Counted from the first letter of the stretch, positions 775 to 23,355 are shown. The stretch is 64,000 nt of DNA from Zancudomyces culisetae HAW-14-8 (GCA_052426225.1 JBNJNM010000007.1:372001-436000); one strand, 5' to 3'. Notes: a model not told the origin generated them from the sequence alone. Made by a program: numbers and translations.

Positions 775-906
775 GAAAACCACAATGGTGAAAACAGATG
801 TGCAAGCATCTGCAACAATCAGACAATCAGTATGAATAATAGAGATTTACAGTAGATTAACCTACTATACATTATCATCTATATATTCATACGACATCCC
901 CCCCCC

Positions 907-3900
907 TTAAGGTTCGATAGTCCCTATCGACCTCCTCCTATCTCTCTGATCTCGTAAACTCGAAATTATTCGTGTCGAAATCACATTTGGAATTCCGATC
1001 GTGTTATATGGCTTGAGTCTATCGCCATTGATTATATCGTGATTGTTGTTCAAATCGCGTACCATATATGTTCCATTTTCTAGCACTCTAACTACTTCGT
1101 ATGGCCCCTTCCATTTCTCTGCAAATTTCGATTCTGGAATATCATTGTGCTTTAACACCTGCTGTCCTTCACTAAATTTGTATTCTTTTACATTGCTGTC
1201 GTACCTAAATTTCTCATATTTTTTATTAGTTTTTAGTTTATCTACTGCTAGCTCTCTCAATTCTTTAAAATTTTTATTAACAAATTCAAGTCGCTCTAAT
1301 ATTGCCTCATCTAAGTTTTCATTAGTATTAATGTTATTCCATGACTCTGGTGTAGTGATATTTAAACCATATAATAGCTCTGCAGGCGATTTTTTTGTAA
1401 CCCTATTTTTAGTACTTCTTATAACCAATAAAACTTTCCATAAATATTTATCCCAATTTGTTTTATCATTTTTGCAAATTTTTGAAAGGACATTTTTTAT
1501 GTATTGATTTTGCCTTTCTACTTGACCATTTGATTGTGGTCTATAAGCTGTAGTAGGGTTATGATTTATGCCCATAAATTCATAAAATTCAAGTACTGTG
1601 TCACTTAAGAAGTTGGATCCTCTATCTGTTATCAATTTTTTTGGTATCCCATAATTGGCTATTACGTCGTAAACTAAAAAATTAATTATAGTATCAGATT
1701 GAACTTGTTCAACAGCTCGACAAATCGGCCATTTAGTTAAATAATCTATCGCGGAAATAATGTATCTATTTCCTTCTGTTGAGATTGGATTGATTGGTCC
1801 TATTATGTCTAATCCTATAATTTCGAATGGTTGAGTAGCAATTATTGGGTTTGCTAAATTTTTTCTTATTCTTGATGATTTATATCGTTGACAAATATCG
1901 CAAAAATTAACCACATGTTTTGTAATCTCGAATAATTTTGGTGAATAATATTTTTTCTTAACCAATTCCCATGTATTGTTAATTCCAAGGTGATTTTCAT
2001 TATGAATTTCGATAATTTTTTCCTTACAATTCAACTCGTGTAATACCTCTCGTATTCCAAATTTAGATGAGTATTTGTATAATTTATCATTCTTCAATTC
2101 GAAACGTTTAGACTTAGTTCGTAATTTGTTTTTGTAAGTTTCGTCACTATTTGAGGGGTAAGTGTTGTTAGTCAAATAATTTTTTATAACTGTGTAATCG
2201 ATAAATTCCATGGAGAACAACGCCTTTGAATTTTCTTCATCGTTTGTAGTTTCTTCTGTTTTATCTACAATTTCTTTTTCTTCATTTTTCTTTTCTTTAA
2301 AGTTAATAAAACTAAAGTCCTTATACACTAATTCTTCACTTTTTAAACCTTTTTCATTTGTATCGTCTGTAGTATAATCCGGAATACACCTCGATATTAG
2401 ATCTGCAGGGTTATTCTTTCCCTTTCGGTGTTCTAATGTATAGTCGTATTCTCGCAAAATAATGGCCCATCGAGCTAGCCTTCCTGATGCTTCCTTGGAG
2501 TCGAAGAGTCTGACCAGCGCTGAATGATCGGTTACAATTTTAAATTGCCTTCCCCAGATGTAGTTTCTGAACTGGTTAACTGCGAATATTATGGCAAGTC
2601 CTTCTAGGTGAGTTATCGAGTAGTTTTTTTCTGATTTTTTTAATGATCTACTTACATATGCTATAGGATGTTCTTTTTGGTCCTGAACTTGGCTTAATAT
2701 ACCCCCGATACCTTGTAATGAAGCGTCGGTTGTAACTATGAAAGGTATATCCCATTTTGGGTGTGCCAGCACTGGTGCGGTAACTAGTTTTACTTTTAAT
2801 GTATCTATTGCATTTTGGCATTCCATATTCCATTTCCATACTGTATCTTTTCTTAATAAAGAGTTTAACGGTCCTGCAATCATTGCATAATTATTTATGA
2901 ATTTCCTGTAATAATTCGTTGTACCGAGAAAGCTTTATAGTTCTTTTACAGTTGTAGGAGTTGGAAGTTTTTCAATGGCTTCAACTTTTTTTTGATCTGT
3001 TTCAATCCCGTTTACGGAAATAACATGTCCTAAATAGTTTAGTCTCTTTTGTCCGAAACTACACTTACTCGAATTTAATTTTATTTTATTACTTCTTAAT
3101 AGATCGAATACCTTTTTTAAATCCAGTACATGTTGCTCCTCATCTTTAGAAAACACAACGATGTCGTCGACAAAAACAACAGCAGACTTCCACAGTACTG
3201 ATTGCAAAACACGTTCCATGAGTCGTTGAAAAGTTGGAGGGCTGTTACAAAGGCCGAAAGGCATTACATTGTAACAGTATAGCCCCTCCCCTGGGATAGT
3301 GAATGCAGTCTTGTGCTTATCTTCTGCTTTCAATTTAACCTGCCAAAACCCCGACAGCGCATCTAGGGTGCTAAAGATACCAGAACCTGTAAGTACTTCG
3401 AATATATCACTGATATTAGGTAGTGGGTAGTTATCCTTTTTAGTCACAGAGTTAAGTTTTCTGTAATCAGAACATATTCTCAACGTTCCATTCTTTTTCC
3501 AAACAGTGACTACTGGAGCACACCAGTCTGACACACACGGTTCAATTATCCCTTTTTGCTCCATTGTTTATATTTCTTTCCTAACCATATCTTTCATAAC
3601 ATTAGGAATTCTATAGGGTCGTAACTTAACCGGTTGTGCATCACCTGTGTCAATACTGTGTTCTACTACGTTAGTAGAAGTGAGTTGCCGGTACTCTTCA
3701 GCGAATATATCCTGGTAAGTGTTTATCAAGTCTTTTATTCTCTGGTCTACTTCATTTGCATTTTCCATCTGATTAACAATCTCTTTTCCTATCCCAAAAA
3801 TTTCGATATCCTTATAGCTTGATTTTTCTGATCTGTTAACTTGAACTTCTCCATCAGTTGTAAAAGGTAATTCCACTGTAACATACTGCTTTGATATGGT

Positions 3901-5617
3901 TATTTTCTGCTTCTGAACATCCATATTAGCCTTATACTTTTTCATCCAGTCAATGCCTAGAATTAATATGTTGTTTGGTATATTCATAATGATAACTTCA
4001 GTATCAAATAACTCTTCTGCTATCTTTATAGGTAAATTGTGAATTTTTCCCAAAGTATTGTGTCGCGCCCCATCGGCGGTTATAATTGATTCTGCAGAGC
4101 TTGCATCTACTTTGTATTGCAACTTCTCTACCAAAAGTCTTGATATTACACTGCATGCTGCGCCAGTGTCTAACACTGTAAGACATTCGGTTCCTAATAT
4201 TTCTACCGTTGTCCTACAATTTGTAACTTTTTCACTACATATAGAATTTATAGCCCTAACCTTAGCAATATTATTATAGAAACTTTCCAACTGTGATTTA
4301 ACGATTGGAGAAATTTCAATTAATTGAGGTAAACTAATATTTGCTTTTACTCTTCCTAAATCTTCAACTAATGAATACGATTTGCTATCATTGTTACTGG
4401 ATGAACTTGCCGATTTTTGACTACTTTGAGCTGAACGAGTGTTAATAACCCTACTGGTCGAAGGTCTCTTGCTTCCTTCAGGAATAGAAGTAACATGATC
4501 CGTATCCATTGGTTCGCTGTCATTTCCTTCAGTGTTGGAGTGTAATCTCTTTACTACTTTGGCTGTCCCTGCCTGTGCATTAGATTCTTCAGCGTTTTTT
4601 CTCTTCTCTGCCATGTACAATTCTTGGTTCCACTTCCACTTCCAAACAGTTAATCTCTTTTACTTCCGCATTGTTGTTTGGTACCGATTTATGAATCTCT
4701 TGATCATTCTTTACTTCAGTTTTTCTGTCTCCATTATCATAATTTGAGTAAGTATTCCTCTGGTAATTTCTTTTATCTTGTTGCTGATAGTTTGAAAACT
4801 GATCTTTATTTTTGTTGAAGTAATTATTGTGATTTTGATTATTGTTTCGATTACCATATCTTTGGTTATTTTGACTATTAGCCTTCATAAAATCCATTAC
4901 ATTAACATTTAGGCTATCGAATTTTCCAATAAGGACCTCCATCTCTGTACAATTTTTGTTTCGAGCATCATTACTGCTTCCATGATACGTTAAGTTGTTC
5001 ACAGTGTTTGTGTTAACGACTCCACTCAACATATCTATGTCTTCTTCCTCACGTAATGTATTGATTGCGCTTTCGTACGTCTGAACTTCTCCTTTAATTA
5101 ACAATCTTCTCTTTTCTGGGGTTATAGCATTCCAGAGATATTTAATTTTCATCTTCTCGTCTGTGATCTTAGCATTCTTTGCTAACTTGCCTAACCTGTA
5201 TGATAACATATCAATGTCTTCACCGGGCTCCGGTCTAATGTTTTGAATCTCAACCCATGCATTATATTCTTGCTGCCTTCCAGCAAACTTGCTTGTGAAC
5301 AATTGCTCCAATTCCTTCCATGATGTGAACTTATCCTCATTGATCTCAAACCACATTCTCGCCTTTCCCTCCAAATAATATTCCATTATCTCTACCGTTT
5401 CTACTTCACTCCATCCACCATGTGTAGCAAAGAGATGGTATCTCTTTAGCCACTTTAATGCATCTTCTCCATTATCAGGGTTAAACTTTTCTGGTTCAAG
5501 TTTATTGCTAACCATTCGCTTCTGCTGTTTTTCCATTACAACTTCTGTACTTTCGGTGTTTTGTTTTTGTTTATTTGCACGATCAGTGCTAGATTTTTCT
5601 TTACTCGGTATTGTCAT
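907..5617 (-). pseudogene. E1 gag-pol, disrupted
   Basis: Protease LDTGAA, RT FVDD, RNase H TDAS, integrase HHCC/DDE and GPY motifs. Frame change near 4625; in-frame TAA stops at 3568-3570 and 2935-2937. Confidence 0.92.
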
Positions 5618-5670
5618 TTGTATGACTTAAATAAAATCAATGTAACTACAACTATGAATACTTTAGTTGT

Positions 5671-5688
5671 GTCCTGGCTGGATCACCA
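5671..5688 (-). promoter_or_regulatory. Primer-binding site of E1 (TGGTGATCCAGCCAGGAC), probably tRNA-Arg(ACG)
   Basis: Starts TGG, 5 nt inside the LTR. The identical 18-mer is in E2 and E3. Its complement ...TCCTGGCTGGATCA-CCA resembles eukaryotic tRNA-Arg(ACG) 3' ends; tRNA identity is inferred. Confidence 0.8.
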
Positions 5689-6121
5689 TATTCTGTCGTA
5701 TGAAAAATTGTATATTGTATAAAAATATTGAGTGTATTACAGTACGACGAAGCTGTAATCACTATTACTTAATGTTTAAAATTGGTCCAGGACCTTCCTA
5801 AAATAACTAGTTAACTGTAGAAAGTAGCTTTTATTTAGTTATCGTTGGTATAATAAACGCTAGAAGAAAGAGTATAAAATCCCGAACAAGGTATCCTTAG
5901 ACCTTGTCGACGCTATTTAAGTAGTTTGTTATATAAAGTGCTATAAAATCCTAATAGTAATAAAGTAAACCTTTGTCTGATTGTTGCTGCACAAAGGAAA
6001 ACCACAATGGTGAAAACAGATGTGCAACCATCTGCAACAATCAGACAATCAGTATGAATAATAGAGATTTACAGTAGATTAACCTACTATACATTATCAT
6101 CTATATATTCATACGACAAAA

Positions 6122-6718
6122 TGTTGTATGCAAAAGCATCAACTTAAATTTACCGCTTTCATTGCAGCAAAATAGCAGAGAAATCAATTTTGAAAAAATT
6201 GTTTCCTGCGCAATTCAATTTAGAGTACAAAAATTATGACCATGTCATAAATTTTTGTCAATTTTACAGCCAATTTAATAGTACAAATCGATTTATTTTT
6301 TAATCGAATCGATTTTATACTTTATTAGTGGATTTATTTTTAATCAATTTTATTAGTAAATTATTAGTATAAATTGAAAAAATTTGTAAATCCGACCAAA
6401 ACCACACTAAAAGTAAAAATAAACATATATAGAGAGGCGTAATACTATTTTTTTAGTGTAAGGAAAGGGCCATTTTGGCTATATTTTCCAGGTTTTGGGC
6501 GGAATTCTTTTAAATAAAATTATTTTTACCAAAAATTGTGGAAATTGTCCAGTTGTGTTCTTTCCGAGGGGGTTTTATAGATAGAGGTTAACTGGCTAGA
6601 AATGGTAAATCCTGTGTCAGTAATAACCACCCTTCTAGGGAACCGTGATTGATATTAGTGGAAGTTTTTTGGGAAAATCCTATTGGACTAGTACTAAAAA
6701 ATGAAAACGAATTCAACA
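6122..6718. mobile_element. Solo LTR S1 (~597 bp)
   Basis: Termini TGTTGTAT...TTCAACA, wedged between E1 and E2 with spacers AAA and AAT; no ORF. Confidence 0.75.
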
Positions 6719-6940
6719 AATTGTCGTATAATTTATAAATTATTTTTTAAGTCGAAACTCCATGATGAATTTATTTAGAATTTTGTTGCCTTATTATACT
6801 TTTTTTAGACAACCAATTTACTAAACACTAAATTTATACTTAACTAACTAATAATTAAATCATACTAAATTAAATTATGCTGTTTCCCCGTGTAGTTGAT
6901 TATTTGCTTTTATCAGGTTATCAAATTCACATGTCGTGGT

Positions 6941-7030
6941 TGTAACATTCTCAGATTTTCCAGATGTAACTTTCTCAGATTTCCAGATGTAACTTTCTCA
7001 GATTCCAGATGTAACTTTCTCAGATTTCTT
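6941..7030. repeat. ~23-bp tandem repeat (about 4 copies) in the E2 LTR; also at ~11860-11950
   Basis: Unit GTAACTTTCTCAGATTTCCAGAT with a variable T run. Confidence 0.9.
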
Positions 7031-7133
7031 CAATGTTACGTGAATTTAATATTACCAATTTTGGAAATTACAGTCATTTTTACTCTTATATAATTTACGG
7101 TAATTTAAATTCACGACAGACCCCCTCTTAATT

Positions 7134-10100: not shown

Positions 10101-11548
10101 GGGACTTTCCAAACCTTTCCTAGAGTCACTTGTGGGGTTCCATCGGCCATGAGGAGTATTTCTTGCGCCGAGTGATCTATACTCAACTGAAATTTATCTG
10201 CTAGTGCTTGTGTCATCACACTACAGGCTGCGCCTGTGTCGATTACCACTGTACATTCGCAATTGAACAGAGATATGGTGGCTTTGCAGTTGGTGCTAGG
10301 AGGCTGAGTTATGGTGCTTAGGGCTTTGACATTTTCTAGGTTATCCGTTCCGCATACTTCCTTAAGTTCTGACCTGACCATCGGCGAGACTTTTATCAGC
10401 TGCTCCAAGGTTATACTAGCTTTGATAGATCCTAAGTCTTGTTTAACTGAATAGGTTGGCTTGTCCCTTGCCTTGGCAATCATTCTTTCCATTGGTTTCC
10501 TTTGTCCTTCAGGTGTTTCCTGGTCTGTTTTAAACTGCGGTGCGAGAGAATTAGCTATTTCATATTCCTCGTTTACTGCTTCATGTTTTTCCAACTTATT
10601 TTTCTTTTTTATATTTTTATCATTTTCTGTAATTAGTTTACGCTTCTCGATAATACTGAGCTCTTTCCAGCGGAGCTCAATATCATCTACTAAGTCATTT
10701 TGATGGTCTTGAAATAACTCTACTACACTTAGCTCTTTTCCTTTATTGTTGAAGCTGGGTTGGATGGTAGGCCTAGCTTTTAGTGGACATTGCGGACTTA
10801 TATGCCCGACCTCATTGCAGGTGTAGCAGGTAGGTGTAGTGTACTTGAAGGTCATGTTAGCTTCATTACTACTATGGTTGGTGGGCTTTGCCTGTGGAGG
10901 GTTAGTATCAGCTTTAGGTCTAGGCTTAGTGCGGTGGGATGCCAACTCTTTGCCTGGATGAGTCTGAATTCTTGGCTCCTGTCTTCCTTCTGAAACCCTT
11001 TTATCCCTTCTTTGGTTGTAGGTGTATACGTTGTCCTGTATAAACCTTTCTAACTCCTCTGTGTCTTTTGCCTTTTGAATGGCCTCGTCATAGCTGTTGA
11101 TTCGACTTTTCAGGATCTCAGTTTGGTAACTTGGTAACAGGGCGGTCATAAGGCATTGATACTGGATAGCTTTGTCCGTGACTTTGGCAGATACAAATAG
11201 GCTCTCAAGTCTACTTATAAAGTCTTCTATATCCTCCGAAGGTAACTGTCTGATTCTTTGTAGTGCACGCCATGAGTTTAATACGGATTCCTTGCTTGTG
11301 TACTTCTTCAAAAACGCCTCCTTATACGTTTTCCAGGTAGTTTCTTCACTTTGCACGGACTCATTCCAAAGTATAACTCTCGGGCCATAGTAGACGTCAA
11401 TATACTCCAACTTTTGTTCATCAGTCCAACTCTCACTACGGGCGAACAGTTCAAACCTTTTAATCCAGATGTTTGCATTCTGGTCTGAGGATCCATTGAA
11501 TACTGGCGGTTCTGCGAGTCTTGGTACTCTTGCTGAATTTCCAATCAT
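7134..11548 (-). pseudogene. E2 gag-pol with a single frameshift near 8340
   Basis: CCHC knuckle CYTCNEVGHISPQC, DTGAA, FIDD, RNase H, then integrase in a shifted frame (...PYKLREGKLV...HEDGHSG...). A 1-nt deletion or a sequencing error. Confidence 0.85.
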
Positions 11549-11597
11549 GATTTTTGCTTAAATTTGCTGTTTGTTACTCAATTTCCTTTCTGTTTGT

Positions 11598-11615
11598 GTC
11601 CTGGCTGGATCACCA
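11598..11615 (-). promoter_or_regulatory. PBS of E2
   Basis: Same 18-mer as E1/E3, but 25 nt from the LTR end. Confidence 0.8.
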
Positions 11616-12042
11616 TTTATTATATATTTATTATAATTACTGTCGTATAATTTATAAATTATTTTTTAAGTCGAAACTCCATGATGAATTTATTTAGAAT
11701 TTTGTTGCCTTATTATACTTTTTTTAGACAACCAATTTACTAAACACTAAATTTATACTTAACTAACTAATAATTAAATCATACTAAATTAAATTATGCT
11801 GTTTCCCCGTGTAGTTGATTATTTGCTTTTATCAGGTTATCAAATTCACATGTCGTGGTTGTAACATTCTCAGATTTTCCAGATGTAACTTTCTCAGATT
11901 TCCAGATGTAACTTTCTCAGATTCCAGATGTAACTTTCTCAGATTTCTTCAATGTTACGTGAATTTAATATTACCAATTTTGGAAATTACAGTCATTTTT
12001 ACTCTTATATAATTTACGGTAATTTAAATTCACGACAAAATA

Positions 12043-15000: not shown

Positions 15001-17090
15001 GCGTTTGAGAAGCTAAAGAACGCACTCTGCTCACCCCCGACTCTAACCCATCCCGATTGGGAACAAGAGTTTATATTAACTACTGATGCATCTTACAAAG
15101 GTATTGGTGGAATTTTGTCTCAGTTAAAGAACAATGAAGAAAAGCCCATATGCTACATCAGTCGTACCACCAATAAACATGAAAAGAATTACAGTGTGAC
15201 TCATTTGGAAGGGTTAGCACTAGTGTGGTCAATCAAAAAGTTTAAATACTATCTATGGGGTCGTCACTTTACTATCAGAACCGACCATAAATCACTTCTC
15301 CAGCTATTCGACGGAACAGAGATCACTGGAAGAGTTGCCCGTTGGGCAATGATTCTAAGGAATTACAATTACACCATAGTACATTGCCAAGGAAAGAACA
15401 ATCCCGCCGACGCGCTGTCAAGGTTAGAAACTGATAACATACCTAAGAAGGAAGAGACTATCGACGTTCTTGCTATGGATTTTCTTTATTATGAAGCGAT
15501 AAAGGAATATTTAAGAAGTTATAACTATCCTAATAATGCAGACGAGAGTTTCAGAAAAAGATTAAGAGACAAAAGCCGTAAATACAAGTTGCAAGGTGAT
15601 AAGCTAGTAAGAATAGTAAAGGGTAATAAAAAGGAAGTACTTCACGAACGTAATGTCTACAACGAAATAAAACTAATACATGAGGAAGGACATGAAGGAA
15701 TGACAAACACATGGCTAAAAGTTAAAGAAAAATTTACAGGGAATAGATTATTTGATACAGTAAAAGCTGTAGTAAACCAATGCGAGAGCTGTCAATTATT
15801 TAAAGGAAGCCGAGTAAAAAGGATAGGACTCCAACCCATATTGGCTCCAAGACCCTTTGAAATATTTGGACTTGATGCTATAGGGCCGATATCACCTATA
15901 TCGAAGGCCGGAAATAGATTTATTCTTACGGGGATAGATTACTTTACAAAATGGCCAGTAGCGATAGCAGTAAGTAATATTCAAACAGAAACCATTATTA
16001 ACTTTATCATCACAGAAATAGTTCAGAACTTTGGTGTTCCGGCTCAGGTTATAACAGACAGAGGCGCAGGATTCATAAGTAATCTTTCAGAAAAGTTGTA
16101 CCAAGAGTTAGAGATCAGACACACTCCAACCACAGCCTATCGTCCCCAAAGCAATGGACAGGTAGAGCGGTTGAACCAAACACTTAAGAACTCTCTAGTC
16201 AAGCAATGTAGAAAAAATAAAGAGAACTGGGACCAGTACATCTGGAAGTCCCTTCTGGCCATTAGAACAATGAGGAATAATGCCACAAAATTTAGTCCCG
16301 CGGAGCTGCTATATGGCACTAAAATTTCTACTCCAAGTACTTGGACACCCCCGCCTGATGTCGAGGATATGGACATTGCCATACAAGAAAGAGTAGAAGC
16401 GATCAAGTCGGAATTACCTGCATTGAGGAGGTCAGGGCTAACGAACAGTAAAACTACTAAGGAGAAAGAAAGAATCAGGTACAATAGAAATGTTCAAGTG
16501 TACGAGTTTAAGGAGGGTAATCTAGTGCTCAAAAAAGTGGAACAACCGCAGAGCAAGTTCGAACAGCTATGGGAAGGCCCATACCGTGTCGACAGAAAAT
16601 TGAGGTTAGGTACCTATGTTATAACGGACAGTGATGGTAACCGAGACCTCGTACACGGGGACCTACTGAAACACTACCACTATAAGGACGAGATGATACC
16701 AGATGTTACTACAACATTGAAGTCAAAGCTAAAAAGATTTAGGATGGTAGGTCCAATCTGGAGCAGGGGTTCTGTCATATAATCATATGACGTGAACAAA
16801 TTTTACATAGTTTTTAATTATTGGTTTTATAGGATTAGCAGTATTATTAGATTGGACCTTTTTCCCCTCGTGGTTTTTGTCCATCATTTATAACTTAGTC
16901 AATTTATTATAATATTTTTATTATCGAAATGAGCTGAGATAAAAGGCATTGCCGAAAAACACAAATAAAGTAACTTTTGAACTCAAAAAAATAAGAATAT
17001 AGTATATACAGTTTATAGTAATAAAATATTATAGTATAGAATTATATCAAATAATAAGACAAAGTAAACAATTAAGTTCAAAACTTAACA
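12043..17090 (+). mobile_element. Intact Ty3/Gypsy LTR retrotransposon E3
   Basis: Apparently identical 318-bp LTRs 12043-12360 and 16773-17090 (TGTCA...TTAACA). PBS 12362-12379; short PPT ~16760-16769. Confidence 0.97.
12394..16782 (+). CDS. E3 Gag-Pol polyprotein, single ORF (1462 aa)
   Basis: CFNCQKLGHKRHEC, VDTGAV, FIDD, TDAS, HHCC/DDE integrase and WEGPY motifs. The stop codon lies inside the 3' LTR. Confidence 0.97.
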   Translation: MDSIQRFEESSDIEPMEWLNQFRLLAKLNKWDESDWIDLIQLKLGRRELIWYKKNLDKFTDWTTFTVEFRDKFSKENQGYLSYDKLKEIKQENYSSIEELEYALEVSLRDANVEDETAKFNWLVSSLRPEYKIKVREGKLSEWDEVINWIMENERTKVQNTSWRSELEAAQREEHSGLGRRTGENTTGSIGYQDMLNKMEEWSVNILSKVDEAVERRMKSVQNTGNPRHRYVPRPVRCFNCQKLGHKRHECKANPSQYRNQSPPQDRGVNVLETERMESETSEVLAVQRRKSPEVRANPYKATQARQEHVKAPHLTQIKMEVQEDMPMSEPKKQPAKISAPLKMAENVKPFSLNEELATFYPHISLPQLLEVSPKLSNELSMLNKKVKKNEINELYMEEPKQSNCKIRASVFGSEVITIVDTGAVCSVATPDLIEEWGLMSEPDENQIIITADGKKHLTRGKIIGVPLEIGGMEFPTDMTIMDRMDNTLILGTDFLQRYKVIIDLQTRSVKIPLTSAELVVPIYTNSYSDSSAQNYSEIYLMAKLDSIEAEVQDKYDDVRFDRLREEYNDLFVEDLEELTQTDVVEHTIELTDGKAIKQRPYRIPYHLQQKVRSELKVMEENKIISPCASEWCSPVVTVWKKNGKLRICADYRRLNQVTKKDVYPLPTIDDIFMSLSGSIVFSTLDALNGFWQIKMAEKDREKTAFSIPGSGSYCYNVMPFGLTNSPASFQRLMEKTLEPVLWKSAVVFIDDIIVFSKSLDTHVEDLRQVFDLLKSNKVQLHRNKTYLGMRRIEYLGHVLTEEGIETSPAKIEAIQKFMRPTSVKELQSFLGLTGYYRKFVKEYALTTVPLLKLLKKNSKWAWDDEMEMAFEKLKNALCSPPTLTHPDWEQEFILTTDASYKGIGGILSQLKNNEEKPICYISRTTNKHEKNYSVTHLEGLALVWSIKKFKYYLWGRHFTIRTDHKSLLQLFDGTEITGRVARWAMILRNYNYTIVHCQGKNNPADALSRLETDNIPKKEETIDVLAMDFLYYEAIKEYLRSYNYPNNADESFRKRLRDKSRKYKLQGDKLVRIVKGNKKEVLHERNVYNEIKLIHEEGHEGMTNTWLKVKEKFTGNRLFDTVKAVVNQCESCQLFKGSRVKRIGLQPILAPRPFEIFGLDAIGPISPISKAGNRFILTGIDYFTKWPVAIAVSNIQTETIINFIITEIVQNFGVPAQVITDRGAGFISNLSEKLYQELEIRHTPTTAYRPQSNGQVERLNQTLKNSLVKQCRKNKENWDQYIWKSLLAIRTMRNNATKFSPAELLYGTKISTPSTWTPPPDVEDMDIAIQERVEAIKSELPALRRSGLTNSKTTKEKERIRYNRNVQVYEFKEGNLVLKKVEQPQSKFEQLWEGPYRVDRKLRLGTYVITDSDGNRDLVHGDLLKHYHYKDEMIPDVTTTLKSKLKRFRMVGPIWSRGSVI

Positions 17091-17093
17091 AAT

Positions 17094-17467
17094 TGTCGTA
17101 TAAATATAGTATAAGTAAAACTGTATTTGAGAACTGATGTTGTTTTATTTTAGAAATACTAAACCTTATATAAAATTCTGTAAAAATTATAATCCTAATA
17201 AAATACTTTAATCATATAAATTTTATGATAACATGTGAAATAATAATAATCTGAAACAAGTAAATGAAACATAAGCTAAAATTGTAAATCCAGTCATTAA
17301 AATTTATAAACGTGTTGGGGATGATTTTCTCAACTGTCGATCCATCTGAAATGCTTTGTCATGCGGATTTACGGGAATGTAACGTGAATTTAATCTAACC
17401 ATCTTTGCAATTTATTAAAAACCCAGTGGGAAAAAATTATAAATTGCGGTGATTAAAATTCACGACA
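17094..17467 (-). mobile_element. Solo LTR S2 (374 bp), related to the E2 and S4 LTRs
   Basis: TGTCGTAT...TTCACGACA. Shares ACGTGAATTTAAT and its terminus with the E2 LTR, and AAAAACCCAGTGGGAAAAA with S4. Orientation inferred from E2. Confidence 0.85.
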
Positions 17468-17472
17468 AATAC

Positions 17473-17693
17473 TGTTATATAGTGGAATTATATACCTGTA
17501 TTTCCTTGTATTTTATTGGTTAATTTAATTAGTATTATTTTATGCATTAAATAGTCTAGTTTTGAATTAATTAATAAATTGTCTTTTACTCCCACAATAA
17601 TTATAGTACTAATATATAATAATAAAAGTCCCGTCCTGTATAATACTGGGTAATTATATTACTCAGTAGGACGTTAAACATGTAATTATACAA
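17473..17693. mobile_element. Solo LTR S3 (223 bp), split by E4; its last 2 nt (CA) lie at 22780-22781
   Basis: Reconstructs to TGTTATAT...ATACAACA, flanked by ATAC (17469-17472) and ATAC (22782-22785). Confidence 0.75.
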
Positions 17694-18060
17694 TGTCGTA
17701 TAGTACAATAGTACTATGTTTTAGTTTAGTTTTGTTTATTTTAGTATATTTTTTAGTTCAATTTTATAAAGTTATTTTAGATAGGTTTTATTGGCTAAAA
17801 TTACGTAAAGGAAAAACAATGAAAATTGAATCCCTTTAATCGTAATTAGTTTTTATTTAAGGTTTGGTAGAGTTTTTGTGAGAGTCTTATCTATCAGATT
17901 TTTTGGTTCACATTAATAAATATTAGATTCTAATCACTCAATATATCAGTACAAGTTAATCTTTAAGTGGTATTAGTTATCAAGGATAATACTTACTTAG
18001 AGTTACAAATTATATTGTTTTTACATTAGGTATAAATAAAATTTCTTTATTATACGACAG

Positions 18061-18080
18061 TGGTGCCTTCTGTCGGAATC
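18061..18080 (+). promoter_or_regulatory. PBS of E4 (TGGTGCCTTCTGTCGGAATC), a different primer tRNA, possibly Thr
   Basis: 1 nt after the 5' LTR. The complement GATTCCGACAGAAGGCA-CCA has the form of a T-arm plus acceptor stem; identity is uncertain. Confidence 0.75.
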
Positions 18081-18101
18081 TACATCGATACTAATTGAAT
18101 C

Positions 18102-21100
18102 ATGGACAAAGTCACTATATTCGAAAGTGGGAAAGGAATAAACGCCGAGGACTGGCTTGAGGACTTTCAACTAATTGCGAAGATTAACAAGTGGGACCCT
18201 GAGGATTGGGTCGGGTTAGTTAAGTTGTGGCTAGGCAAGTCTGAAACAATCTGGTATAAGAGGAACAAGAATAGTTTCACGTCGTGGGAAATATATACTA
18301 AGGAGTTCAAAAAGAAATATAGTACAGTGTTTTCTACTAGTGGAGCATGGACCAGACTTGGAACAATCAAACGAGCAGAGTTTGAAAGTCTGGAGGAGCT
18401 AGAAATGGAATTGGAAAAGTTATGGAAACAAGTAGGAATCAAGGAAGAGGTGACTAAACTTGGTTCACTGGTTAGTACGTTCTCAGATGATATTAGGGAA
18501 AGACTTTCAGATAAGGAAGGTTTAGATAGAGAAGCGGTACTTAAGTTAGTGGCTAAGTTGGAACAAAGTACAAATTGTAGGAGGGATATACAGGCAGCAA
18601 TTAAGAGTAGTAAGCCAACTACTAAGAACGCTGCTACCCGGTCAGGCAAGTCGGTAAAAGAATTGACTACGGAAGCTGGGCAGTTTGGAGAGTTTCTCAA
18701 AACCTTTCAAGAGCTTAGTGTCAGCCTCTTGGAAAAGTTAGATCAAACGGTTGCTTCAACTAAAAAGTGGGGAAGTCAAGCAAAGGTGGAACGTGCAAGC
18801 ACATGGGAGTGTTATTATTGTCATGAGAAAGGTCACCGGAAGTTTGAATGTCCACGGTTTCAAAAGGAGCACGAGGAAAAGAAAGTCAATTTTTTATCCA
18901 TAGGTACTGAACCTACTGAAGTAGACGAAGTACTTATGGTAGAAAAAAGAAAAGCAACGGATGCGGCTGGTCGAGTTGGAAGACCAGCTAAGATTAGAAA
19001 TACGGGAGACATGGACGCACAGGAGCTTCGGGCGGAGAGAGTCACCCAACCGGAGTCAGGAACGATTGATAGAGTGAAAAAGTTCAATTTGAGGGAAGAG
19101 TTGGAGAAAGTCTATCCAAAAATTAGCATGATTCAATTACTTCAAAATTCGGAAAAAATTGCACAGGATTGGAAAAACATAGTTGAAGTTTCACCGCAGA
19201 CCGCCCTAAACGAGATAAGAATCCAGGAAAAAGCTACTACAAACTGTAGTATGACGGTTGAGATTTACCAGTTACAGTGGAAAGCGGTGGTAGACACAGG
19301 GGCGGCATGCTCTGTGATTACTACAGGTGCTTTGAACAAGATTGGTTTGGAGCCTAACATGAAGAGTTCGCACGTTATTATAACAGCGGACGGGAAACGT
19401 CATGAAACTCTAGGTGTGGTGTCAGGTGTACCAATTATGATTAGTAAAATTGAGTTCGTAGCATCATTGGTGGTGTTGGGAAATATGTCACCAACAATAA
19501 TATTAGGTATGGATTGGCTTTTAAAACATAAAGCCAGTCTAAATCTAGCAGTGCCAGAACTAAGATTACCTGTGGATAGAGCAGAAGTGGTAACACCACT
19601 AGTTACTACCAAAGAAGCACATACTGTAGAGGAAACCTGGGATTTATATTTTTTCACGGAATCACCAACAGGAATACAAGGTGATGGTGTAGCAGGTTTA
19701 GAGGCCTTGATCCAGGACTATAACGAATTATTTGTAGATGATATCGACAAGTTAAAGCAAACAAATGTAGCCGAGCACAGGATAGTACTCACGGATAACA
19801 GGCCAATTAAGCAAAGACCGTACAGGATACCGTTTCGTCTACAAGAAGAAGTAGGAAAAGAAATAGATAGGATGTTAGAGCAAAATGTAATTGCACCTAG
19901 TAACTCCGAGTGGTGCTCGCCGGTGGTGGTTGTCCAGAAGAAAAACGGTAAACTGCGCATCTGCGCAGATTATAGGAAGTTAAACGCAGTTACAGTCAAA
20001 GATTCATACCCACTACCGATTATTCAGGATTTGTTTATGGCCTTGGCTGGTGCGTGCATCTTTACTACTTTAGATGCACTCAGCGGCTTTTGGCAAATAA
20101 AAATGTCAGAAGAAGACCGAGAAAAGACGTCATTCGCGTTGCCGGGAGGGGGGAGTTACCACTATAACGTCATGCCTTTCGGTTTGACAAATAGCCCTTC
20201 CACTTTCCAAAGAACAATGGAAACTGTGTTGAAAAAAGTTCTATGGAAGAAGGCAGTTGTTTTTGTTGACGACATAATCGTCTTTTCAAAAAGTGCAAGC
20301 AGTCATGTAGAAGATCTTAAGGAAGTTTTAGAATTATTAAAACAAGGCCAGATACAGTTGCATAAAGATAAATGCAATATAGGGTTAACAGAAATTGATT
20401 ATTTGGGTCATGTTATTTCGGGTGAAGGTATTGCAACTAGTTCAACAAAAATTGAAGCCATTTCAAAGTTAAAGTCACCGACATGCATAAAAGAAGTTCA
20501 GTCATTTTTGGGGATGACAGGTTATTATCGTAAGTTTATTGAAAAATATGCTATAATAGCTAACCCACTAACTGCGTTATTAAAGAAAGGAATAAAGTGG
20601 AACTGGGGAAAATCTCAAGAAGAAGCATTTTTAGAGTTGAAAAAAGCGATGACGGAAGCCCCAGTGCTTGCGCACCCAAATTGGGATTATTCTTTTGTGG
20701 TTACGACGGACGCTGCAGTTAGTGGAGTTGGAGCAATACTATCACAAGTTATTGAAGGAAAAGAAAGACCAGTGGAGTATGCAAGTAGAACAACCAGTAA
20801 TGCAGAGAAAAATTATTCGATCAGTCACTTGGAGGGGTTGGCGGTTGTCTGGGCCGTTAAAAAGTTTAAGTTTTATTTATATGGTAGGAAGTTTGTAATA
20901 AAAACCGATCATAAAGCATTATTAAATATGTTTAACGGCGAAGAATTAAGTGGAAGGCTAGCTAGATGGGCTATGTTTCTTAGAAGTTACGAATTCGATA
21001 TAGAGCATATACCAGGGAAGGTCAATCCTGCTGACCATTTATCTCGAAGTAGTCTGATAGAAACAACTGAGGAAGAATCAATTGAAGTCTACAACATTTG

Positions 21101-22397
21101 GGTAAACGAAGAAAATTTAGTTAGGCAATTTTTATTAGATGGAACACTGCCACAAGACGTTTCAGAAGAGTTAGCTGAAAAAATAAAGAAAAAATCTAAG
21201 TCATACAAGCAGGTGGATGGCAAAATATACAGGTGGGTTAAGGGACAATTAAAAGAAGTTTTGACGGCTGAAGAGAGTATAGATATGATCAAGAAGGTTC
21301 ACGACGATACACACGAGGGTATCGAAAACACTTGGGTAAGAGTAAGCAGAAATCATTATGCTAAAGGATTGTACAAGCAGGTAGTGGACTATGTTAAGCG
21401 GTGTCATGTTTGTCAAGTTTTCAAGGATGGGAGAAGTCGTAAACACCCGTTGGTACCAGTGCATGCAGTCAAGCCGTTCGAAATATTCGGTATGGACGCT
21501 ATCGGTCCTATCAATCCTATTTCAGAGTCAGGAAATCGTTATATTCTAACAGCTATAGATTATTGCACGAAATGGCCGATAGCCATTCCCGTAGACAACT
21601 TGTTAAGTGAAACTATAGTAGACTTTATAATAAACAATATCGTTACTTACTACGGTGTACCACAGAAGATAATAACAGATAGGGGTTCGAGCTTTGTCAG
21701 CAACGTTACTACTGAGGTATTCAACTGGTTACAGCTGGACCACAGTCCTACCACTTCATACCGTCCGCAGAGCAACGGACAGTGTGAACGATTGAACAAG
21801 ACGTTAGTAAATTTGTTACAGAAGATATGTAGGAAAGACAAAAATAATTGGGATCGTTACCTGTGGAAGGTGTTACTCATCATGAGAACTATGGAGAGCA
21901 AGAGTACTGGTTATACACCCGCCGAGATGATTTACGGAACCGAAATGTGCATTCCCTCGACTTGGAAATCTAATGGTGTAATTGAAGATGAAGTTGAACA
22001 AGTTAAAAGTAGATTGGAGCTAATGAAGAGTAACTTACCGCAAATAAGAAAAATCGGGGTTCGCAAAGCTGTAGCAGCAAAAGAATCTGAAAAAGTAAGA
22101 TATAATAAAACCGTTAAATTTACAAAATTTCAAGTTGGAGAAAAAGTGTTAAAGTTAGTAGAGTATGAAAGAGGAAAGCTTGAAAGTTTATGGGAAGGCC
22201 CATATACAGTTATGAAAAGGTTTACTAAGGGGGCTTACTTAATCTCAGATCAGTTCGGAAATAGAGATTTAGTCAACGGAGACTTGCTAAAGAAGTACCA
22301 TGAATCTAAATTTATGATTCCCGAAATTTCAAATCGACTTCGACCTAAGTTACTTACCTTTAAACAGGCTCAAAATAATGAGGGCATTATCGCCTAA
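18102..22397 (+). CDS. E4 Gag-Pol polyprotein, single ORF (1431 aa)
   Basis: CYYCHEKGHRKFEC, VDTGAA, FVDD, RNase H, integrase and WEGPY motifs. Confidence 0.97.
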   Translation: MDKVTIFESGKGINAEDWLEDFQLIAKINKWDPEDWVGLVKLWLGKSETIWYKRNKNSFTSWEIYTKEFKKKYSTVFSTSGAWTRLGTIKRAEFESLEELEMELEKLWKQVGIKEEVTKLGSLVSTFSDDIRERLSDKEGLDREAVLKLVAKLEQSTNCRRDIQAAIKSSKPTTKNAATRSGKSVKELTTEAGQFGEFLKTFQELSVSLLEKLDQTVASTKKWGSQAKVERASTWECYYCHEKGHRKFECPRFQKEHEEKKVNFLSIGTEPTEVDEVLMVEKRKATDAAGRVGRPAKIRNTGDMDAQELRAERVTQPESGTIDRVKKFNLREELEKVYPKISMIQLLQNSEKIAQDWKNIVEVSPQTALNEIRIQEKATTNCSMTVEIYQLQWKAVVDTGAACSVITTGALNKIGLEPNMKSSHVIITADGKRHETLGVVSGVPIMISKIEFVASLVVLGNMSPTIILGMDWLLKHKASLNLAVPELRLPVDRAEVVTPLVTTKEAHTVEETWDLYFFTESPTGIQGDGVAGLEALIQDYNELFVDDIDKLKQTNVAEHRIVLTDNRPIKQRPYRIPFRLQEEVGKEIDRMLEQNVIAPSNSEWCSPVVVVQKKNGKLRICADYRKLNAVTVKDSYPLPIIQDLFMALAGACIFTTLDALSGFWQIKMSEEDREKTSFALPGGGSYHYNVMPFGLTNSPSTFQRTMETVLKKVLWKKAVVFVDDIIVFSKSASSHVEDLKEVLELLKQGQIQLHKDKCNIGLTEIDYLGHVISGEGIATSSTKIEAISKLKSPTCIKEVQSFLGMTGYYRKFIEKYAIIANPLTALLKKGIKWNWGKSQEEAFLELKKAMTEAPVLAHPNWDYSFVVTTDAAVSGVGAILSQVIEGKERPVEYASRTTSNAEKNYSISHLEGLAVVWAVKKFKFYLYGRKFVIKTDHKALLNMFNGEELSGRLARWAMFLRSYEFDIEHIPGKVNPADHLSRSSLIETTEEESIEVYNIWVNEENLVRQFLLDGTLPQDVSEELAEKIKKKSKSYKQVDGKIYRWVKGQLKEVLTAEESIDMIKKVHDDTHEGIENTWVRVSRNHYAKGLYKQVVDYVKRCHVCQVFKDGRSRKHPLVPVHAVKPFEIFGMDAIGPINPISESGNRYILTAIDYCTKWPIAIPVDNLLSETIVDFIINNIVTYYGVPQKIITDRGSSFVSNVTTEVFNWLQLDHSPTTSYRPQSNGQCERLNKTLVNLLQKICRKDKNNWDRYLWKVLLIMRTMESKSTGYTPAEMIYGTEMCIPSTWKSNGVIEDEVEQVKSRLELMKSNLPQIRKIGVRKAVAAKESEKVRYNKTVKFTKFQVGEKVLKLVEYERGKLESLWEGPYTVMKRFTKGAYLISDQFGNRDLVNGDLLKKYHESKFMIPEISNRLRPKLLTFKQAQNNEGIIA

Positions 22398-22785
22398 AGG
22401 GGGAGTGCTGTCGTATAGTACAATAGTACTATGTTTTAGTTTAGTTTTGTTTATTTTAGTATATTTTTTAGTTCAATTTTATAAAGTTATTTTAGATAGG
22501 TTTTATTGGCTAAAATTACGTAAAGGAAAAACAATGAAAATTGAATCCCTTTAATCGTAATTAGTTTTTATTTAAGGTTTGGTAGAGTTTTTGTGAGAGT
22601 CTTATCTATCAGATTTTTTGGTTCACATTAATAAATATTAGATTCTAATCACTCAATATATCAGTACAAGTTAATCTTTAAGTGGTATTAGTTATCAAGG
22701 ATAATACTTACTTAGAGTTACAAATTATATTGTTTTTTACATTAGGTATAAATAAAATTTCTTTATTATACGACAACAACAATAC

Positions 22786-23274
22786 TGTCGTATTAATATC
22801 TTTTATTAATAGACTAAAAATTTATTATTGATAATATTAATATTTTATATTTTATATTTTTATTATTATTGTTATATATGTTATTAAGTAAAAAATATAA
22901 TAAAATTGTTGTTTTTTTTCTCTGACGAGAATTTGAACGTCTTTTATACTTTTAGAAACGCTAAATAAACTTATAAATAAACTAAATTAATATTACTATA
23001 AATTAATAAAGATAGCCTAATTCATATGAAAACATAAAACATTGTTATAATTGATGTGAGTTGTAATGACTCACGAAAGTTGAACTAGATCGATTTACAT
23101 TCACAGTGATGTCATTAGATTTACATTCACAGTGACGTCAACTGATTTACGTTCACTGTGATGTAATAAGATGACATCATTGTGAATTTGATTGTCGTAA
23201 AATTACTATCGGAATTTACAATCAAAAAAACCCAGTGGGAAAAAGGATTATAAATCTTCAGTAATTTCACGACA
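22786..23274 (-). mobile_element. Solo LTR S4 (489 bp), tRNA-proximal
   Basis: TGTCGTAT...TTCACGACA with a perfect 4-bp TSD ATAC (22782-22785 / 23275-23278). Confidence 0.88.
23092..23168. repeat. 26-bp tandem repeat x3 in S4
   Basis: GATTTACATTCACAGTGA(T/C)GTCA units; contains TGACGTCA. Confidence 0.85.
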
Positions 23275-23280
23275 ATACAT

Positions 23281-23353
23281 GGGGGACTAGCTCAAATGGT
23301 AGAGCGCTCGCTTAGCATGCGAGAGGTACGGGGATCGATACCCCGGTTCTCCA
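23281..23353 (+). tRNA. tRNA-Ala(AGC)
   Basis: 73 nt. Acceptor stem GGGGGAC/GTTCTCC with the G3:U70 Ala identity pair; anticodon loop TTAGCAT; GATCGA T-loop typical of eukaryotic Ala tRNA. Confidence 0.97.
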
Positions 23354-23355
23354 CT

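What the first reader, a model, noticed from the sequence alone, without database searches (positions are those of the whole stretch)
775..23353. Multi-family LTR retrotransposon stack at one target a few bases upstream of a tRNA gene: an ordered insertion record
Seen: eight LTR-bounded units (E1, S1, E2, E3, S2, S3, E4, S4), with largely unrelated LTR interiors, both orientations and two primer tRNAs, abut end-to-end. The spacers are AAA (6119-21), AAT (6719-21), AAATA (12038-42), AAT (17091-93), AATAC (17468-72), ATAC (22782-85) and ATACAT (23275-80, then the tRNA). All are pieces of AAATACAT. Clean 4-bp TSDs can be read for E2 (AAAT), S3 and S4 (both ATAC, same site) and E4 (ACAA); S1 and S2 are off by 1-2 nt. 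Inference: each new element integrated about 3-12 nt before the mature tRNA 5' end and pushed the earlier ones outward, so 22 kb grew from one ~10-bp site and position encodes age. Established: yeast Ty3 and Dictyostelium DGLT-A target Pol III gene starts. I do not recall a description of such a deep multi-family stack in this kind of fungus.
Basis: partly seen in the sequence, partly recalled or inferred. Interest (0 to 1): 0.93.

Follow-up and report, generated by a model that had tools for sequence, protein, structure and literature searches.

The report
tRNA-anchored stack of LTR retrotransposons
About 23 kb of this fungal chromosome is a pile of Ty3/gypsy-type retrotransposons and their leftover end-repeats, built because one element after another inserted into the same few bases just upstream of a tRNA gene; this targeting habit is known from yeasts and slime moulds but has not been described in this early-diverging mosquito-gut fungus.

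Summary
Window 775-23280 contains four full-length Ty3/gypsy elements (two per strand) and four solo LTRs, lying end to end. Their 3-6 nt spacers are all pieces of AAATACAT, and the series ends 6 nt before a tRNA-Ala/tRNA-Lys pair.

- E1's LTR is about 425 bp. Its distal copy is cut to 122 bp at position 775.
- The TE cluster continues left to the window start.
- E4 is nested 2 nt inside S3.
- E3 has a clean AATA duplication once S2 is read as a later insertion.

- Of 20 other tRNA loci in this genome, 11 carry an LTR end 3-10 nt upstream.
- A duplicated locus differs by three units, all added at the tRNA-proximal site.
- One element sits between the two genes of a tRNA dicistron, with a 4-bp duplication at -8..-5.
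- A contig from a second isolate has at least five units all separated by CGAC before a tRNA-Val.

The genome is Zancudomyces culisetae. The mechanism is most likely Ty3/Tj1-like Pol III-directed integration, which is inferred. No description was found in the searched literature.

A second LTR family sits specifically downstream of tRNA genes.

This scan has already found the same phenomenon on other DNA of this genome.

The parts
1..774 (+). E0: degenerate integrase fragment (about 1-362) followed by a 411-bp LTR (364-774, TGTCAT...TTGACA). It abuts E1's truncated LTR with no spacer, so the TE cluster continues beyond the window start.
   Evidence: Frame 2 of the translation has the rve core motif. 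The LTR is 96.6% identical to a unit in L001 and 89% to one in L002.
775..6118 (-). E1: Ty3/gypsy element on the minus strand. The 5' LTR is 5694-6118 (425 bp), and the PBS at 5672-5689 sits 5 nt from the LTR. The 3' LTR is truncated to 122 bp (775-896), with a PPT at 897-910. gag-pol is broken into at least 4 ORFs.
6119..6121 (.). Spacer AAA.
6122..6718 (+). S1: solo LTR (TGTTGTATGC...TTCAACA). It is 99.3% identical to the LTRs of a full-length element that ends 9 nt before a tRNA-Lys(UUU) in L010.
6719..6721 (.). Spacer AAT. Together with S1's last A it forms the left copy of E2's TSD, AAAT.
6722..12037 (-). E2: Ty3/gypsy element on the minus strand with identical 397-bp LTRs. The PBS lies 25 nt inside the 5' LTR end (11603-11615). 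pol is split into two ORFs.
12038..12042 (.). Spacer AAATA. It contains the right copy of E2's TSD (AAAT), overlapping the left copy of E3's TSD (AATA).
12043..17090 (+). E3: intact Ty3/gypsy element with identical 318-bp LTRs, a PBS at 12362 and one 1462-aa gag-pol ORF (12394-16782).
17091..17093 (.). Spacer AAT. This is the first 3 nt of E3's right TSD copy, which was split when S2 inserted later.
17094..17467 (.). S2: solo LTR (TGTCGTATAAAT...TTCACGACA). The family has full-length members elsewhere, seen as LTR pairs about 5.02 kb apart.
17468..17472 (.). Spacer AATAC, which holds the left copy of S3's TSD, ATAC.
17473..17693 (.). S3, main part: solo LTR (TGTTATATAG...TTATACAA) interrupted 2 nt before its end by E4. 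The last 2 nt (CA) are at 22780-22781.
   Evidence: A 97.8% identical uninterrupted copy in L051 ends ...TTATACAACA.
17694..22775 (+). E4: intact Ty3/gypsy element. The LTRs are 366 and 367 bp and differ by one T-run indel. TSD is ACAA (17690-93 and 22776-79). The PBS at 18061 is complementary to tRNA-Thr(AGU). The ORF is 1431 aa (18102-22397).
22782..22785 (.). Spacer ATAC, serving as S3's right TSD copy and S4's left TSD copy.
22786..23274 (.). S4: solo LTR (TGTCGTATTAAT...TTCACGACA). The genome holds 11 copies. At least 3 of the other 10 lie 7-8 kb upstream of a known tRNA.
23275..23280 (.). ATACAT: the present landing site. The ATAC duplication sits at -6..-3 from the tRNA.
23281..23428 (+). 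Anchor: tRNA-Ala(AGC) at 23281-23354 and tRNA-Lys(CUU) at 23356-23428, 1 nt apart, followed by a T-run terminator.
   Evidence: for tRNA-Lys.
23445..24516 (.). Three copies of a different LTR family ('D'): 23445-23871 on the plus strand, 23872-24239 inverted, and a partial copy at 24240-24516. The first starts 16 nt after the tRNA-Lys end. This family sits downstream of tRNA genes genome-wide.

Best explanation
This is a tRNA-anchored insertion stack. A radiation of related, chromodomain-less Ty3/gypsy retrotransposons in Zancudomyces culisetae integrates with a 4-bp target duplication, occasionally 3 bp. The target lies in a window about 3-12 nt upstream of the first base of mature tRNA sequences, which is presumably at or next to the Pol III transcription start.

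Each insertion recreates the target between itself and the tRNA. The next element therefore lands there again and pushes earlier ones outward. LTR-LTR recombination reduces many units to solo LTRs.

At this locus the inferred order is (E0/E1) < S1 < E2 < E3 < S2 < S3 < E4 < S4.

What is shown:
- the anatomy of the units;
- the chain of duplications;
- the same geometry at many other tRNA genes and in a second isolate;
- addition at the proximal end in a duplicated locus.

What is inferred:
- the integrase is tethered by the Pol III initiation machinery (TFIIIB/TFIIIC), as in Ty3;
- the short conserved basic tail at the integrase C-terminus is the tethering module;
- the distal-to-proximal order is strictly chronological.
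For: Anatomy and spacers. Spacer chance about 8e-9.

Genome-wide sample: I fetched 20 tRNA loci chosen only by tRNA score (10 Lys-UUU, 10 Thr).
- 11 have a repeated LTR ending in ...ACA 3-10 nt before the tRNA.
- 7 of those are full-length elements with LTRs 98.6-100% identical.
- 7 loci are empty and 2 are ambiguous.
- The same geometry occurs at two tRNA-Phe loci.

LTR-LTR junction motifs in tRNA-upstream DNA number 59, against 13.6 in shuffles.

The other 40 kb of the window is ordinary host genes with no shared repeats.

Proximal addition: L006 (contig C21) and L005 (contig C19) are a 99.5% identical duplicate pair. They differ by 6571 bp, which is 3 units, each flanked by AAA(A), inserted between the older LTR and the tRNA.

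Distance is measured from the tRNA, not from an existing LTR. In L007 an element lies between tRNA-Thr(AGU) and tRNA-Thr(UGU) of a dicistron. Its TSD, CACT, sits at -8..-5 of the second tRNA.

Second isolate and second sequencing technology: contig LSSK01001953 of GCA_001969505.1 has at least 5 units all separated by CGAC, then CGACATAA and tRNA-Val.

Every other E3-family copy abuts other LTR termini, for example one with TSD CAAG.

The closest solved structure is the Ty3 Gag-Pol polyprotein (PDB 7q5b, E 5e-106).

A basic tail after the integrase CTD is conserved in 10 families here. It differs in the non-tRNA-associated relatives from Calcarisporiella and Rhizopus.
Against: - No experiment or de novo insertion data exist. 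The Pol III tether is an analogy with Ty3 and Tj1.
- Other Pol III genes could not be examined. The 5S genes lie in rDNA repeats, and no further sequence could be fetched.
- The S1 and S2 duplications are not clean 4-mers.
- E0/E1 meet at a truncation, so the distal part has been rearranged.
- Insertion into inner junctions cannot be excluded from the spacers alone.
- 7 of 20 tRNA loci are empty.
Confidence: 0.85

Rival explanations
1. The elements target existing LTR ends or junctions (self-nesting) rather than the tRNA. The tRNA would only be where the first insertion happened to be.
For: Most junctions are LTR-to-LTR with similar short spacers. Insertion into an inner junction would leave the same pattern. 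E4 did land inside an LTR end.
Against: - In L007 an element inserted between two tRNA genes, with no LTR nearby on the proximal side and a TSD at -8..-5.
- The duplicated 4-mer is always a piece of the tRNA-proximal sequence: ATAC here and CGAC in L051.
- The three extra units in L006 all lie between the old LTR and the tRNA.
- E4's site was at -12..-9 from the tRNA before S4 arrived.
- 11 of 20 tRNAs carry an LTR end at 3-10 nt.
Confidence: 0.07
2. Integration is random, and selection keeps only copies in harmless places. Elements would then pile up passively near tRNA genes.
For: The genome is compact. The rest of the window is gene-dense and free of TEs.
Against: - Selection cannot produce single-nucleotide precision.
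- The same 4 bp is duplicated five times in L051 and twice here.
- LTR ends sit 3-10 nt from the tRNA at 11 of 20 loci, and only on the 5' side for these families.
- A different family occupies only the 3' side.
Confidence: 0.03
3. The stack is an assembly artefact, produced by mis-joined repeat copies in a long-read assembly.
For: The junctions of this locus could not be checked with reads. One contig (C19) duplicates part of C21.
Against: - Each unit has matching duplications across its two ends, which random mis-joins would not give.
- The same architecture is present in an Illumina assembly of another isolate.
- The downstream flank, including part of the D-family LTR array, is colinear with that assembly at 98.3% identity.
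Confidence: 0.02

Closest known systems
Tj1 of Schizosaccharomyces japonicus (Ty3/gypsy; Guo, Singh & Levin 2015, PMC4600332)
   Same: Tj1 inserts 5-11 bp upstream of the mature tRNA 5' end, which is 1-10 bp from the TSS. That is almost the same window as here (3-12 nt). Its host carries about 10 gypsy families clustered with tRNA genes. Tj1 has an orientation bias toward the tRNA's direction. Here, 6 of 6 full-length elements that sit first in their stack share the tRNA's direction.
   Different: Tj1 makes a 5-bp duplication, and these elements make 4 bp. Tj1 probably self-primes, whereas these have tRNA-complementary PBSs. Both orientations occur here (E1 and E2 are minus). The hosts belong to different phyla, Ascomycota and Zoopagomycota. 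The stacks here are dispersed at ordinary tRNA genes. Whether any are centromeric is unknown.
Ty3 of Saccharomyces cerevisiae (TFIIIB-tethered integration 1-4 bp from the Pol III TSS; review PMC5911963; structure 7q5b)
   Same: Both are Ty3/gypsy elements with position-specific insertion at the start of tRNA genes, in both orientations. Ty3 Gag-Pol is the closest solved structure to E3 pol (E 5e-106).
   Different: Ty3 makes a 5-bp duplication and lies about 16-19 bp from the mature end because yeast leaders are longer (my recollection). By my recollection of the 7q5b paper, Ty3 integrase uses a chromodomain-like module. Here only about 25-35 residues follow the SH3-like CTD, and they carry a different conserved basic motif. 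The tether was not tested here.
Tyl3, Ylt1 and Tyl6 of Yarrowia lipolytica; beta/Tca8 of Candida albicans (Table 1 of PMC5911963)
   Same: [quoted passage not shown] Candida also has many LTR families.
   Different: All are from Ascomycota. I know of no description there of deep, ordered multi-family stacks with re-duplicated 4-mers (recollection plus searches).
DGLT-A of Dictyostelium discoideum
   Same: A Ty3/gypsy element upstream of tRNA genes in a compact, AT-rich genome.
   Different: [quoted passage not shown] The host is an amoebozoan. Relatedness was not tested.
Skipper-2 of dictyostelids (8-23 bp downstream of tRNA genes; PMC5006619, PMC5911963)
   Same: This is the nearest analogue for the 'D' LTR family noticed here, which lies 17-250 nt downstream of tRNA genes and never upstream in the DNA I hold.
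   Different: The distances here are wider and more variable. Skipper-2 has a diverged chromodomain, while the D family's pol could not be fetched. The host is a fungus, not an amoebozoan.

Membership tests
Ty3/gypsy (Metaviridae) LTR retrotransposons | Direct LTRs with TG...CA termini, a PBS after the 5' LTR, and a purine tract before the 3' LTR. | tested here: met
   E1's distal LTR is truncated.
Ty3/gypsy (Metaviridae) LTR retrotransposons | pol domain order PR-RT-RNaseH-IN. | tested here: met
   Pfam hits on E1-E4 in that order. E3 aligns to Ty3 Gag-Pol residues 560-1454.
Pol III start-site-targeting LTR elements (Ty3/Tj1-like behaviour) | Insertions lie within about a dozen bp upstream of tRNA genes, genome-wide. 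| tested here: met
   11 of 20 sampled tRNA loci, plus the window, two tRNA-Phe loci and a tRNA-Val in a second isolate. Spacers are 3-10 nt.
Pol III start-site-targeting LTR elements (Ty3/Tj1-like behaviour) | Other Pol III genes (5S, U6) are also used as targets. | tested here: inconclusive
   The six 5S genes found lie in rDNA-type repeats on C1, C4 and C22. U6 was not searched.
Pol III start-site-targeting LTR elements (Ty3/Tj1-like behaviour) | The integrase binds TFIIIB/TFIIIC, and targeting depends on an active Pol III promoter. | not testable with these tools
   This needs binding or integration assays.
Chromoviruses (chromodomain-bearing Ty3/gypsy) | A chromodomain at the integrase C-terminus. 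| tested here: not met
   No PF00385 hit in E1-E4. Only 24-35 residues follow the CTD. For contrast, a true chromovirus with a canonical chromodomain exists upstream of the tRNA in L018.
Ty3 or Tj1 lineage (phylogenetic membership) | RT/IN groups with Ty3 or Tj1 in a tree. | not tested
   No named reference sequences were available as tool output. The nearest relatives found outside the species come from Calcarisporiella thermophila (43% IN identity), Rhizopus microsporus (42%) and Smittium culicis (37%). None had a tRNA in the DNA available.

The most novel reading that the evidence does not exclude
In Zancudomyces culisetae, tRNA genes may be the near-exclusive habitat of LTR retrotransposons, partitioned by side.

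- A radiation of at least 10 chromodomain-less gypsy families shares a lineage-specific basic integrase tail (...IPEV..L[RK][ST]KL.RF[RK]). All of them hit -12..-3 upstream.
- A separate LTR family hits the 3' flank.

The targeting module would then be a new solution, acquired independently of Ty3's and absent from the nearest relatives in Mucoromycota. The polar stacks would give a readable relative chronology of family invasions that can be compared between isolates.
Probability: 0.35. Interest if true: 0.75.

Novelty: new member of a known kind. Interest (0 to 1): 0.58.

Why it matters
Position-specific integration at Pol III genes is the textbook case of a 'safe-haven' strategy. So far it is documented for LTR elements only in ascomycete yeasts and dictyostelid amoebae (Table 1 of PMC5911963). 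This finding adds an early-diverging fungal phylum, and it has unusual features:

- many co-existing families use the same few bases;
- the 4-bp duplications are clean;
- stacks exceed 20 kb;
- apparently intact, recently active copies exist (E3 and E4);
- a second family is specific to the 3' side of tRNA genes.

Together these give a natural system for asking how integrases find Pol III genes and whether the solution was reinvented. The stacks may also record the order of TE invasions across isolates. Two practical points follow. Stacks like this explain why short-read assemblies of this fungus break at tRNA genes. They are also likely hot spots for rearrangement.

Tried and rejected
1. Read support and isolate comparison at this locus. 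The look-up of sequencing runs found no run holding more than 10% of the words.

2. Larger tRNA sample. The remaining 34 listed tRNA loci, the 5S flanks, the DNA left of the window and the full-length D-family copies could not be read.

3. Complete tRNA catalogue. Only 63 of about 1600 candidates were scored. A B-box pattern gave 261 hits against 130 for the control, but only contigs C1-C10 were listed. It was used for coordinate tests only.

4. Orthologue of the tRNA-Val stack in this genome.
   - The flank and the tRNA match C23:710877-714214 at 98%.
   - The match stops 3 nt into the proximal LTR.
   - No E3-family copy was listed near that locus, and the proximal unit of L051 was not listed there either.
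   - Stack content therefore probably differs between isolates, but this cannot be resolved without sequence.

5. Relatives elsewhere.
   - The closest Logan hits (P0012, P0018) are insect-type gypsy elements with env.
   - The Calcarisporiella loci have no tRNA within 10 kb. The Rhizopus and Smittium contigs are too short to judge.
   - A tRNA-like stretch beside the Smittium element gave no Rfam match and was dropped.

6. Self-priming like Tf1/Tj1. No complementarity between the LTR and the PBS region was found, and ordinary tRNA-type PBSs are present.

7. I read it as three solo LTRs of the D family in mixed orientation.

8. No structure or complex prediction was run. The tether proteins of this genome could not be fetched.

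Full report
**What is there**

ARAGORN finds only two tRNA genes in the window. They are tRNA-Ala(AGC) at 23281-23354 and tRNA-Lys(CUU) at 23356-23428, 1 nt apart.

Upstream lie four LTR pairs:
- 775-896 and 5997-6118, one mismatch;
- 6722-7118 and 11641-12037, identical;
- 12043-12360 and 16773-17090, identical;
- 17694-18059 and 22409-22775, one T-run indel.

The ORFs between them carry protease, RT, RNase H and integrase domains in the Ty3/gypsy order. E1 and E2 are on the minus strand, E3 and E4 on the plus strand. E3 (1462 aa) and E4 (1431 aa) are uninterrupted. E2 is split once and E1 at least three times.

Four further units (S1-S4) begin TGT(C/T)(G/A)T and end (C/T)(G/A)ACA, like the LTRs, and have no interior. 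They are solo LTRs.

**Corrections to the anatomy**

- E1's LTR is really about 425 bp. The PBS shared with E2 and E3 lies at 5672-5689 on the minus strand, 5 nt from an LTR end at 5694. A 96% identical, 425-bp copy exists in L017. Only the first 122 bp of the distal LTR survive.
- At position 775 the truncated E1 LTR abuts, without a spacer, another LTR (364-774) that follows an integrase fragment (1-362). Position 775 is therefore a truncation or nesting breakpoint, and the TE cluster runs off the window.
- E4 sits inside S3, 2 nt from its end, with duplication ACAA. An uninterrupted S3-family copy in L051 confirms the reconstructed end.
- E4's PBS is a perfect 20-nt complement of tRNA-Thr(AGU) plus CCA. 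E1, E2 and E3 share a second PBS, which in E2 lies 25 nt from the LTR.
- No self-priming complementarity was found.

**The duplication chain**

Assume that every element inserts into whatever sequence lies next to the tRNA. The observed series then follows:
- E2 duplicated AAAT at -8..-5, the first A being S1's last base.
- E3 duplicated AATA at -7..-4.
- S2 duplicated only AAT, which splits E3's right-hand copy.
- S3 duplicated ATAC at -6..-3.
- E4 duplicated ACAA at -12..-9 as counted before S4 arrived.
- S4 duplicated ATAC again.

S1's flanks (AAA and AAT) are imperfect, and E1's distal flank is lost. The chance that six random spacers of these lengths are all substrings of AAATACAT is about 8e-9.

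The state of decay agrees with this order. E1 is broken and truncated, E2 has one break, and E3 and E4 are intact.

**Is it general?**

The window is C7:372001-436000 of a 27.1-Mb, 25-contig genome. I fetched 9 kb upstream and 0.9 kb downstream of 20 tRNA loci, chosen only by tRNA score. Ten are Lys(UUU) and ten are Thr.

- In 11 loci, a sequence repeated elsewhere and ending in ...ACA stops 3-10 nt before the tRNA.
- In 7 of these 11 it is a full-length element, with LTRs 98.6-100% identical.
- Seven loci are empty and two are ambiguous.
- Two tRNA-Phe loci met by chance show the same geometry.

LTR-to-LTR junction motifs are 59 in the tRNA-upstream DNA against 13.6 in shuffles. The other 40 kb of the window holds ordinary genes and shares no repeat with the sample. 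These genes include a fungal transcription factor, a CTLH protein, a Rab3GAP subunit and an alpha-mannosidase.

Conversely, every other copy of the E3 family abuts other LTR termini across 2-6 nt. One of them has a clean CAAG duplication.

**Three informative loci**

1. L006 (C21) and L005 (C19) are 99.5% identical duplicates. C19 appears to duplicate about 150 kb of C21. L006 carries 6571 extra bases: a solo LTR, a full-length element with identical LTRs, and another solo LTR. Each is flanked by AAA(A). All lie between the older LTR and the tRNA-Lys. New units were therefore added at the proximal end.

2. In L007 an element lies between tRNA-Thr(AGU) and tRNA-Thr(UGU), which elsewhere are 3-6 nt apart. 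Its duplication, CACT, covers the last bases of the first tRNA and sits at -8..-5 of the second. The distance is measured from the tRNA, not from an earlier LTR.

3. The best protein hit of E3 is a Zancudomyces culisetae Pol at 99% identity. Its contig comes from the Illumina assembly GCA_001969505.1. It carries an E3-family element inside a stack whose last five junctions all read CGAC, followed by CGACATAA and tRNA-Val.

The genome's size, contig number and 5.2-Mb largest contig match the HiFi assembly of strain HAW-14-8. The Illumina assembly is strain COL-18-3 (PMC12611240). The two differ by about 1.7% in the window's right flank. The architecture is therefore seen with a second technology and in a second isolate.

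**Orientation and relatedness**

Pol of the different families is 48-64% identical to E3 over RT-RH-IN. The LTR interiors do not cross-match at E<1e-10. This is one clade with many families.

Eleven or twelve full-length copies point the same way as the tRNA and four the other way. All six that sit first in their stack point with the tRNA.

**Mechanism**

The geometry is that of Tj1 and Ty3. Tj1 inserts 5-11 bp from the mature end (PMC4600332). Ty3 inserts 1-4 bp from the TSS and is tethered by TFIIIB (PMC5911963).

Empty tRNA loci here share a CAAAAAAGT(T/G)-like upstream sequence, and the duplicated 4-mers fall within it. I infer that the integrase is positioned by the Pol III initiation complex. 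This was not tested.

There is no chromodomain. After the SH3-like CTD, the ten families share ...IPEV..L(R/K)(S/T)KL.RF(R/K) followed by a short variable end. The IPEV part also occurs in the nearest relatives from Calcarisporiella and Rhizopus, but the basic part does not. Two Calcarisporiella loci with 10-kb flanks have no tRNA. The tail is thus a candidate targeting module, on correlational evidence only.

**A second family on the other side**

Positions 23445-24516 hold three copies of a different LTR (TGTAGTATAA...TTACA). The first begins 16 nt after the tRNA-Lys, just past its T-run.

- The same family lies 17-251 nt downstream of the tRNA in L001, L002, L010, L014, L015, L018 and L051. 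In L014 a PBS and the start of a gag ORF follow it.
- It is absent from the 180 kb of tRNA-upstream DNA I hold.
- By coordinates, 9 of 13 assessable copies on C6-C10 lie within 200 nt 3' of a tRNA or B-box on the right strand.
- L018 and L020 are paralogues with and without one such insertion.

The only analogue I know is Skipper-2 of dictyostelids.

**What is known**

The review table of Pol III-targeting retrotransposons lists LTR elements only from Ascomycota and Dictyostelium. The survey by Spaller et al. covers amoebozoans. The Z. culisetae genome paper mentions neither LTRs nor tRNAs. Full-text searches for Harpellales or Kickxellomycotina together with retrotransposons or tRNA genes found nothing relevant.

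This scan has already followed up equivalent stacks elsewhere in this genome and reached the same conclusion. I re-derived it independently here.

**Limits**

I worked beside those places and sent them to no search tool afterwards.
The distal end of the stack, the 5S flanks and the D-family interiors therefore remain unread.

**Verdict**

- This is a new member of a known kind.
- It is of moderate to good interest because of the new phylum, the many families, the clean record and the 3'-side family.

Noticed in passing
window 23445-24516; also L001, L002, L010, L014, L015, L018 (downstream parts) and L051:15232-15997: A separate LTR family (about 430 bp, TGTAGTATAA...TTACA) lies 17-251 nt downstream of tRNA genes, in either orientation. 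It is never found in the 180 kb of tRNA-upstream DNA held. By coordinates, 9 of 13 assessable copies on C6-C10 are within 200 nt 3' of a tRNA. LTR pairs about 5.4 kb apart exist, for example C6:1718007 and C6:1723484. Its pol was not read.
   Followed up: partly
L007:3601-9075 (G000 C6, about 853 kb): A full-length element with identical LTRs was inserted between the two genes of a tRNA-Thr(AGU)/tRNA-Thr(UGU) dicistron. Its duplication, CACT, overlaps the last bases of the first tRNA.
   Followed up: yes
L005 (C19:1-9518) versus L006 (C21:2308387-2318358): Contig C19 (159 kb) looks like a 99.5% identical duplicate or haplotig of part of C21. The two copies differ by a 6.6-kb, three-unit insertion at the tRNA-Lys.
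   Followed up: partly
window 16690-16779; equivalent ends of pol in E1, E2, E4, L001, L006, L007, L010, L016, L020: The integrase C-terminal tail ...IPEV..L(R/K)(S/T)KL.RF(R/K) is conserved in ten families. The basic half is absent from the Calcarisporiella and Rhizopus relatives and weak in Smittium.
   Followed up: partly
L020 (upstream of tRNA-Thr, -9000..-8) and L015 (-6565..-4): Tandem arrays appear to share LTRs. L020 has two copies at a 4934-bp period (99.95% identical). L015 has a 2.9-kb unit without a pol match, repeated with three 762-bp LTRs, ending 3 nt before the tRNA.
   Followed up: no
L018, -7700..-2000 upstream of tRNA-Thr, minus strand: A 1602-aa gypsy ORF is only 31% identical to E3 pol and ends in a canonical chromodomain. 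A true chromovirus therefore coexists with the chromodomain-less tRNA-targeting clade. No LTRs were detected in the piece examined.
   Followed up: no
L003, L004, L011, L012, L013, L019, L005, L006: the 12 nt before the tRNA: Unoccupied Lys and Thr tRNA genes share an upstream ACAAAAAAGT(T/G)-like sequence. It may mark the Pol III start region. LTR ends (...ACA) plus A-rich duplications recreate something similar.
   Followed up: no
window 11603-11640: E2's PBS is separated from its 5' LTR by a 25-nt AT-rich stretch. The gap is 5 nt in E1 and 1 nt in E3 and E4.
   Followed up: no
G000 C12:1891131-1899773: Four LTR-like copies lie at an exact 2379-bp period, which indicates a tandem array. This was seen only as coordinates.
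   Followed up: no
G000 C1:10608, 23885, 37067 and C4:4645, 17823: 5S rRNA genes recur at about 13.2-kb spacing, so they appear to sit inside the rDNA repeat rather than dispersed.
   Followed up: no
L052:1-422 versus window 23444-23862: In the COL-18-3 assembly, the contig covering the window's right flank starts with a D-family LTR. Relative to the window's first copy it has the opposite orientation and only 88% identity. This is either an isolate difference or a contig-end artefact.
   Followed up: no
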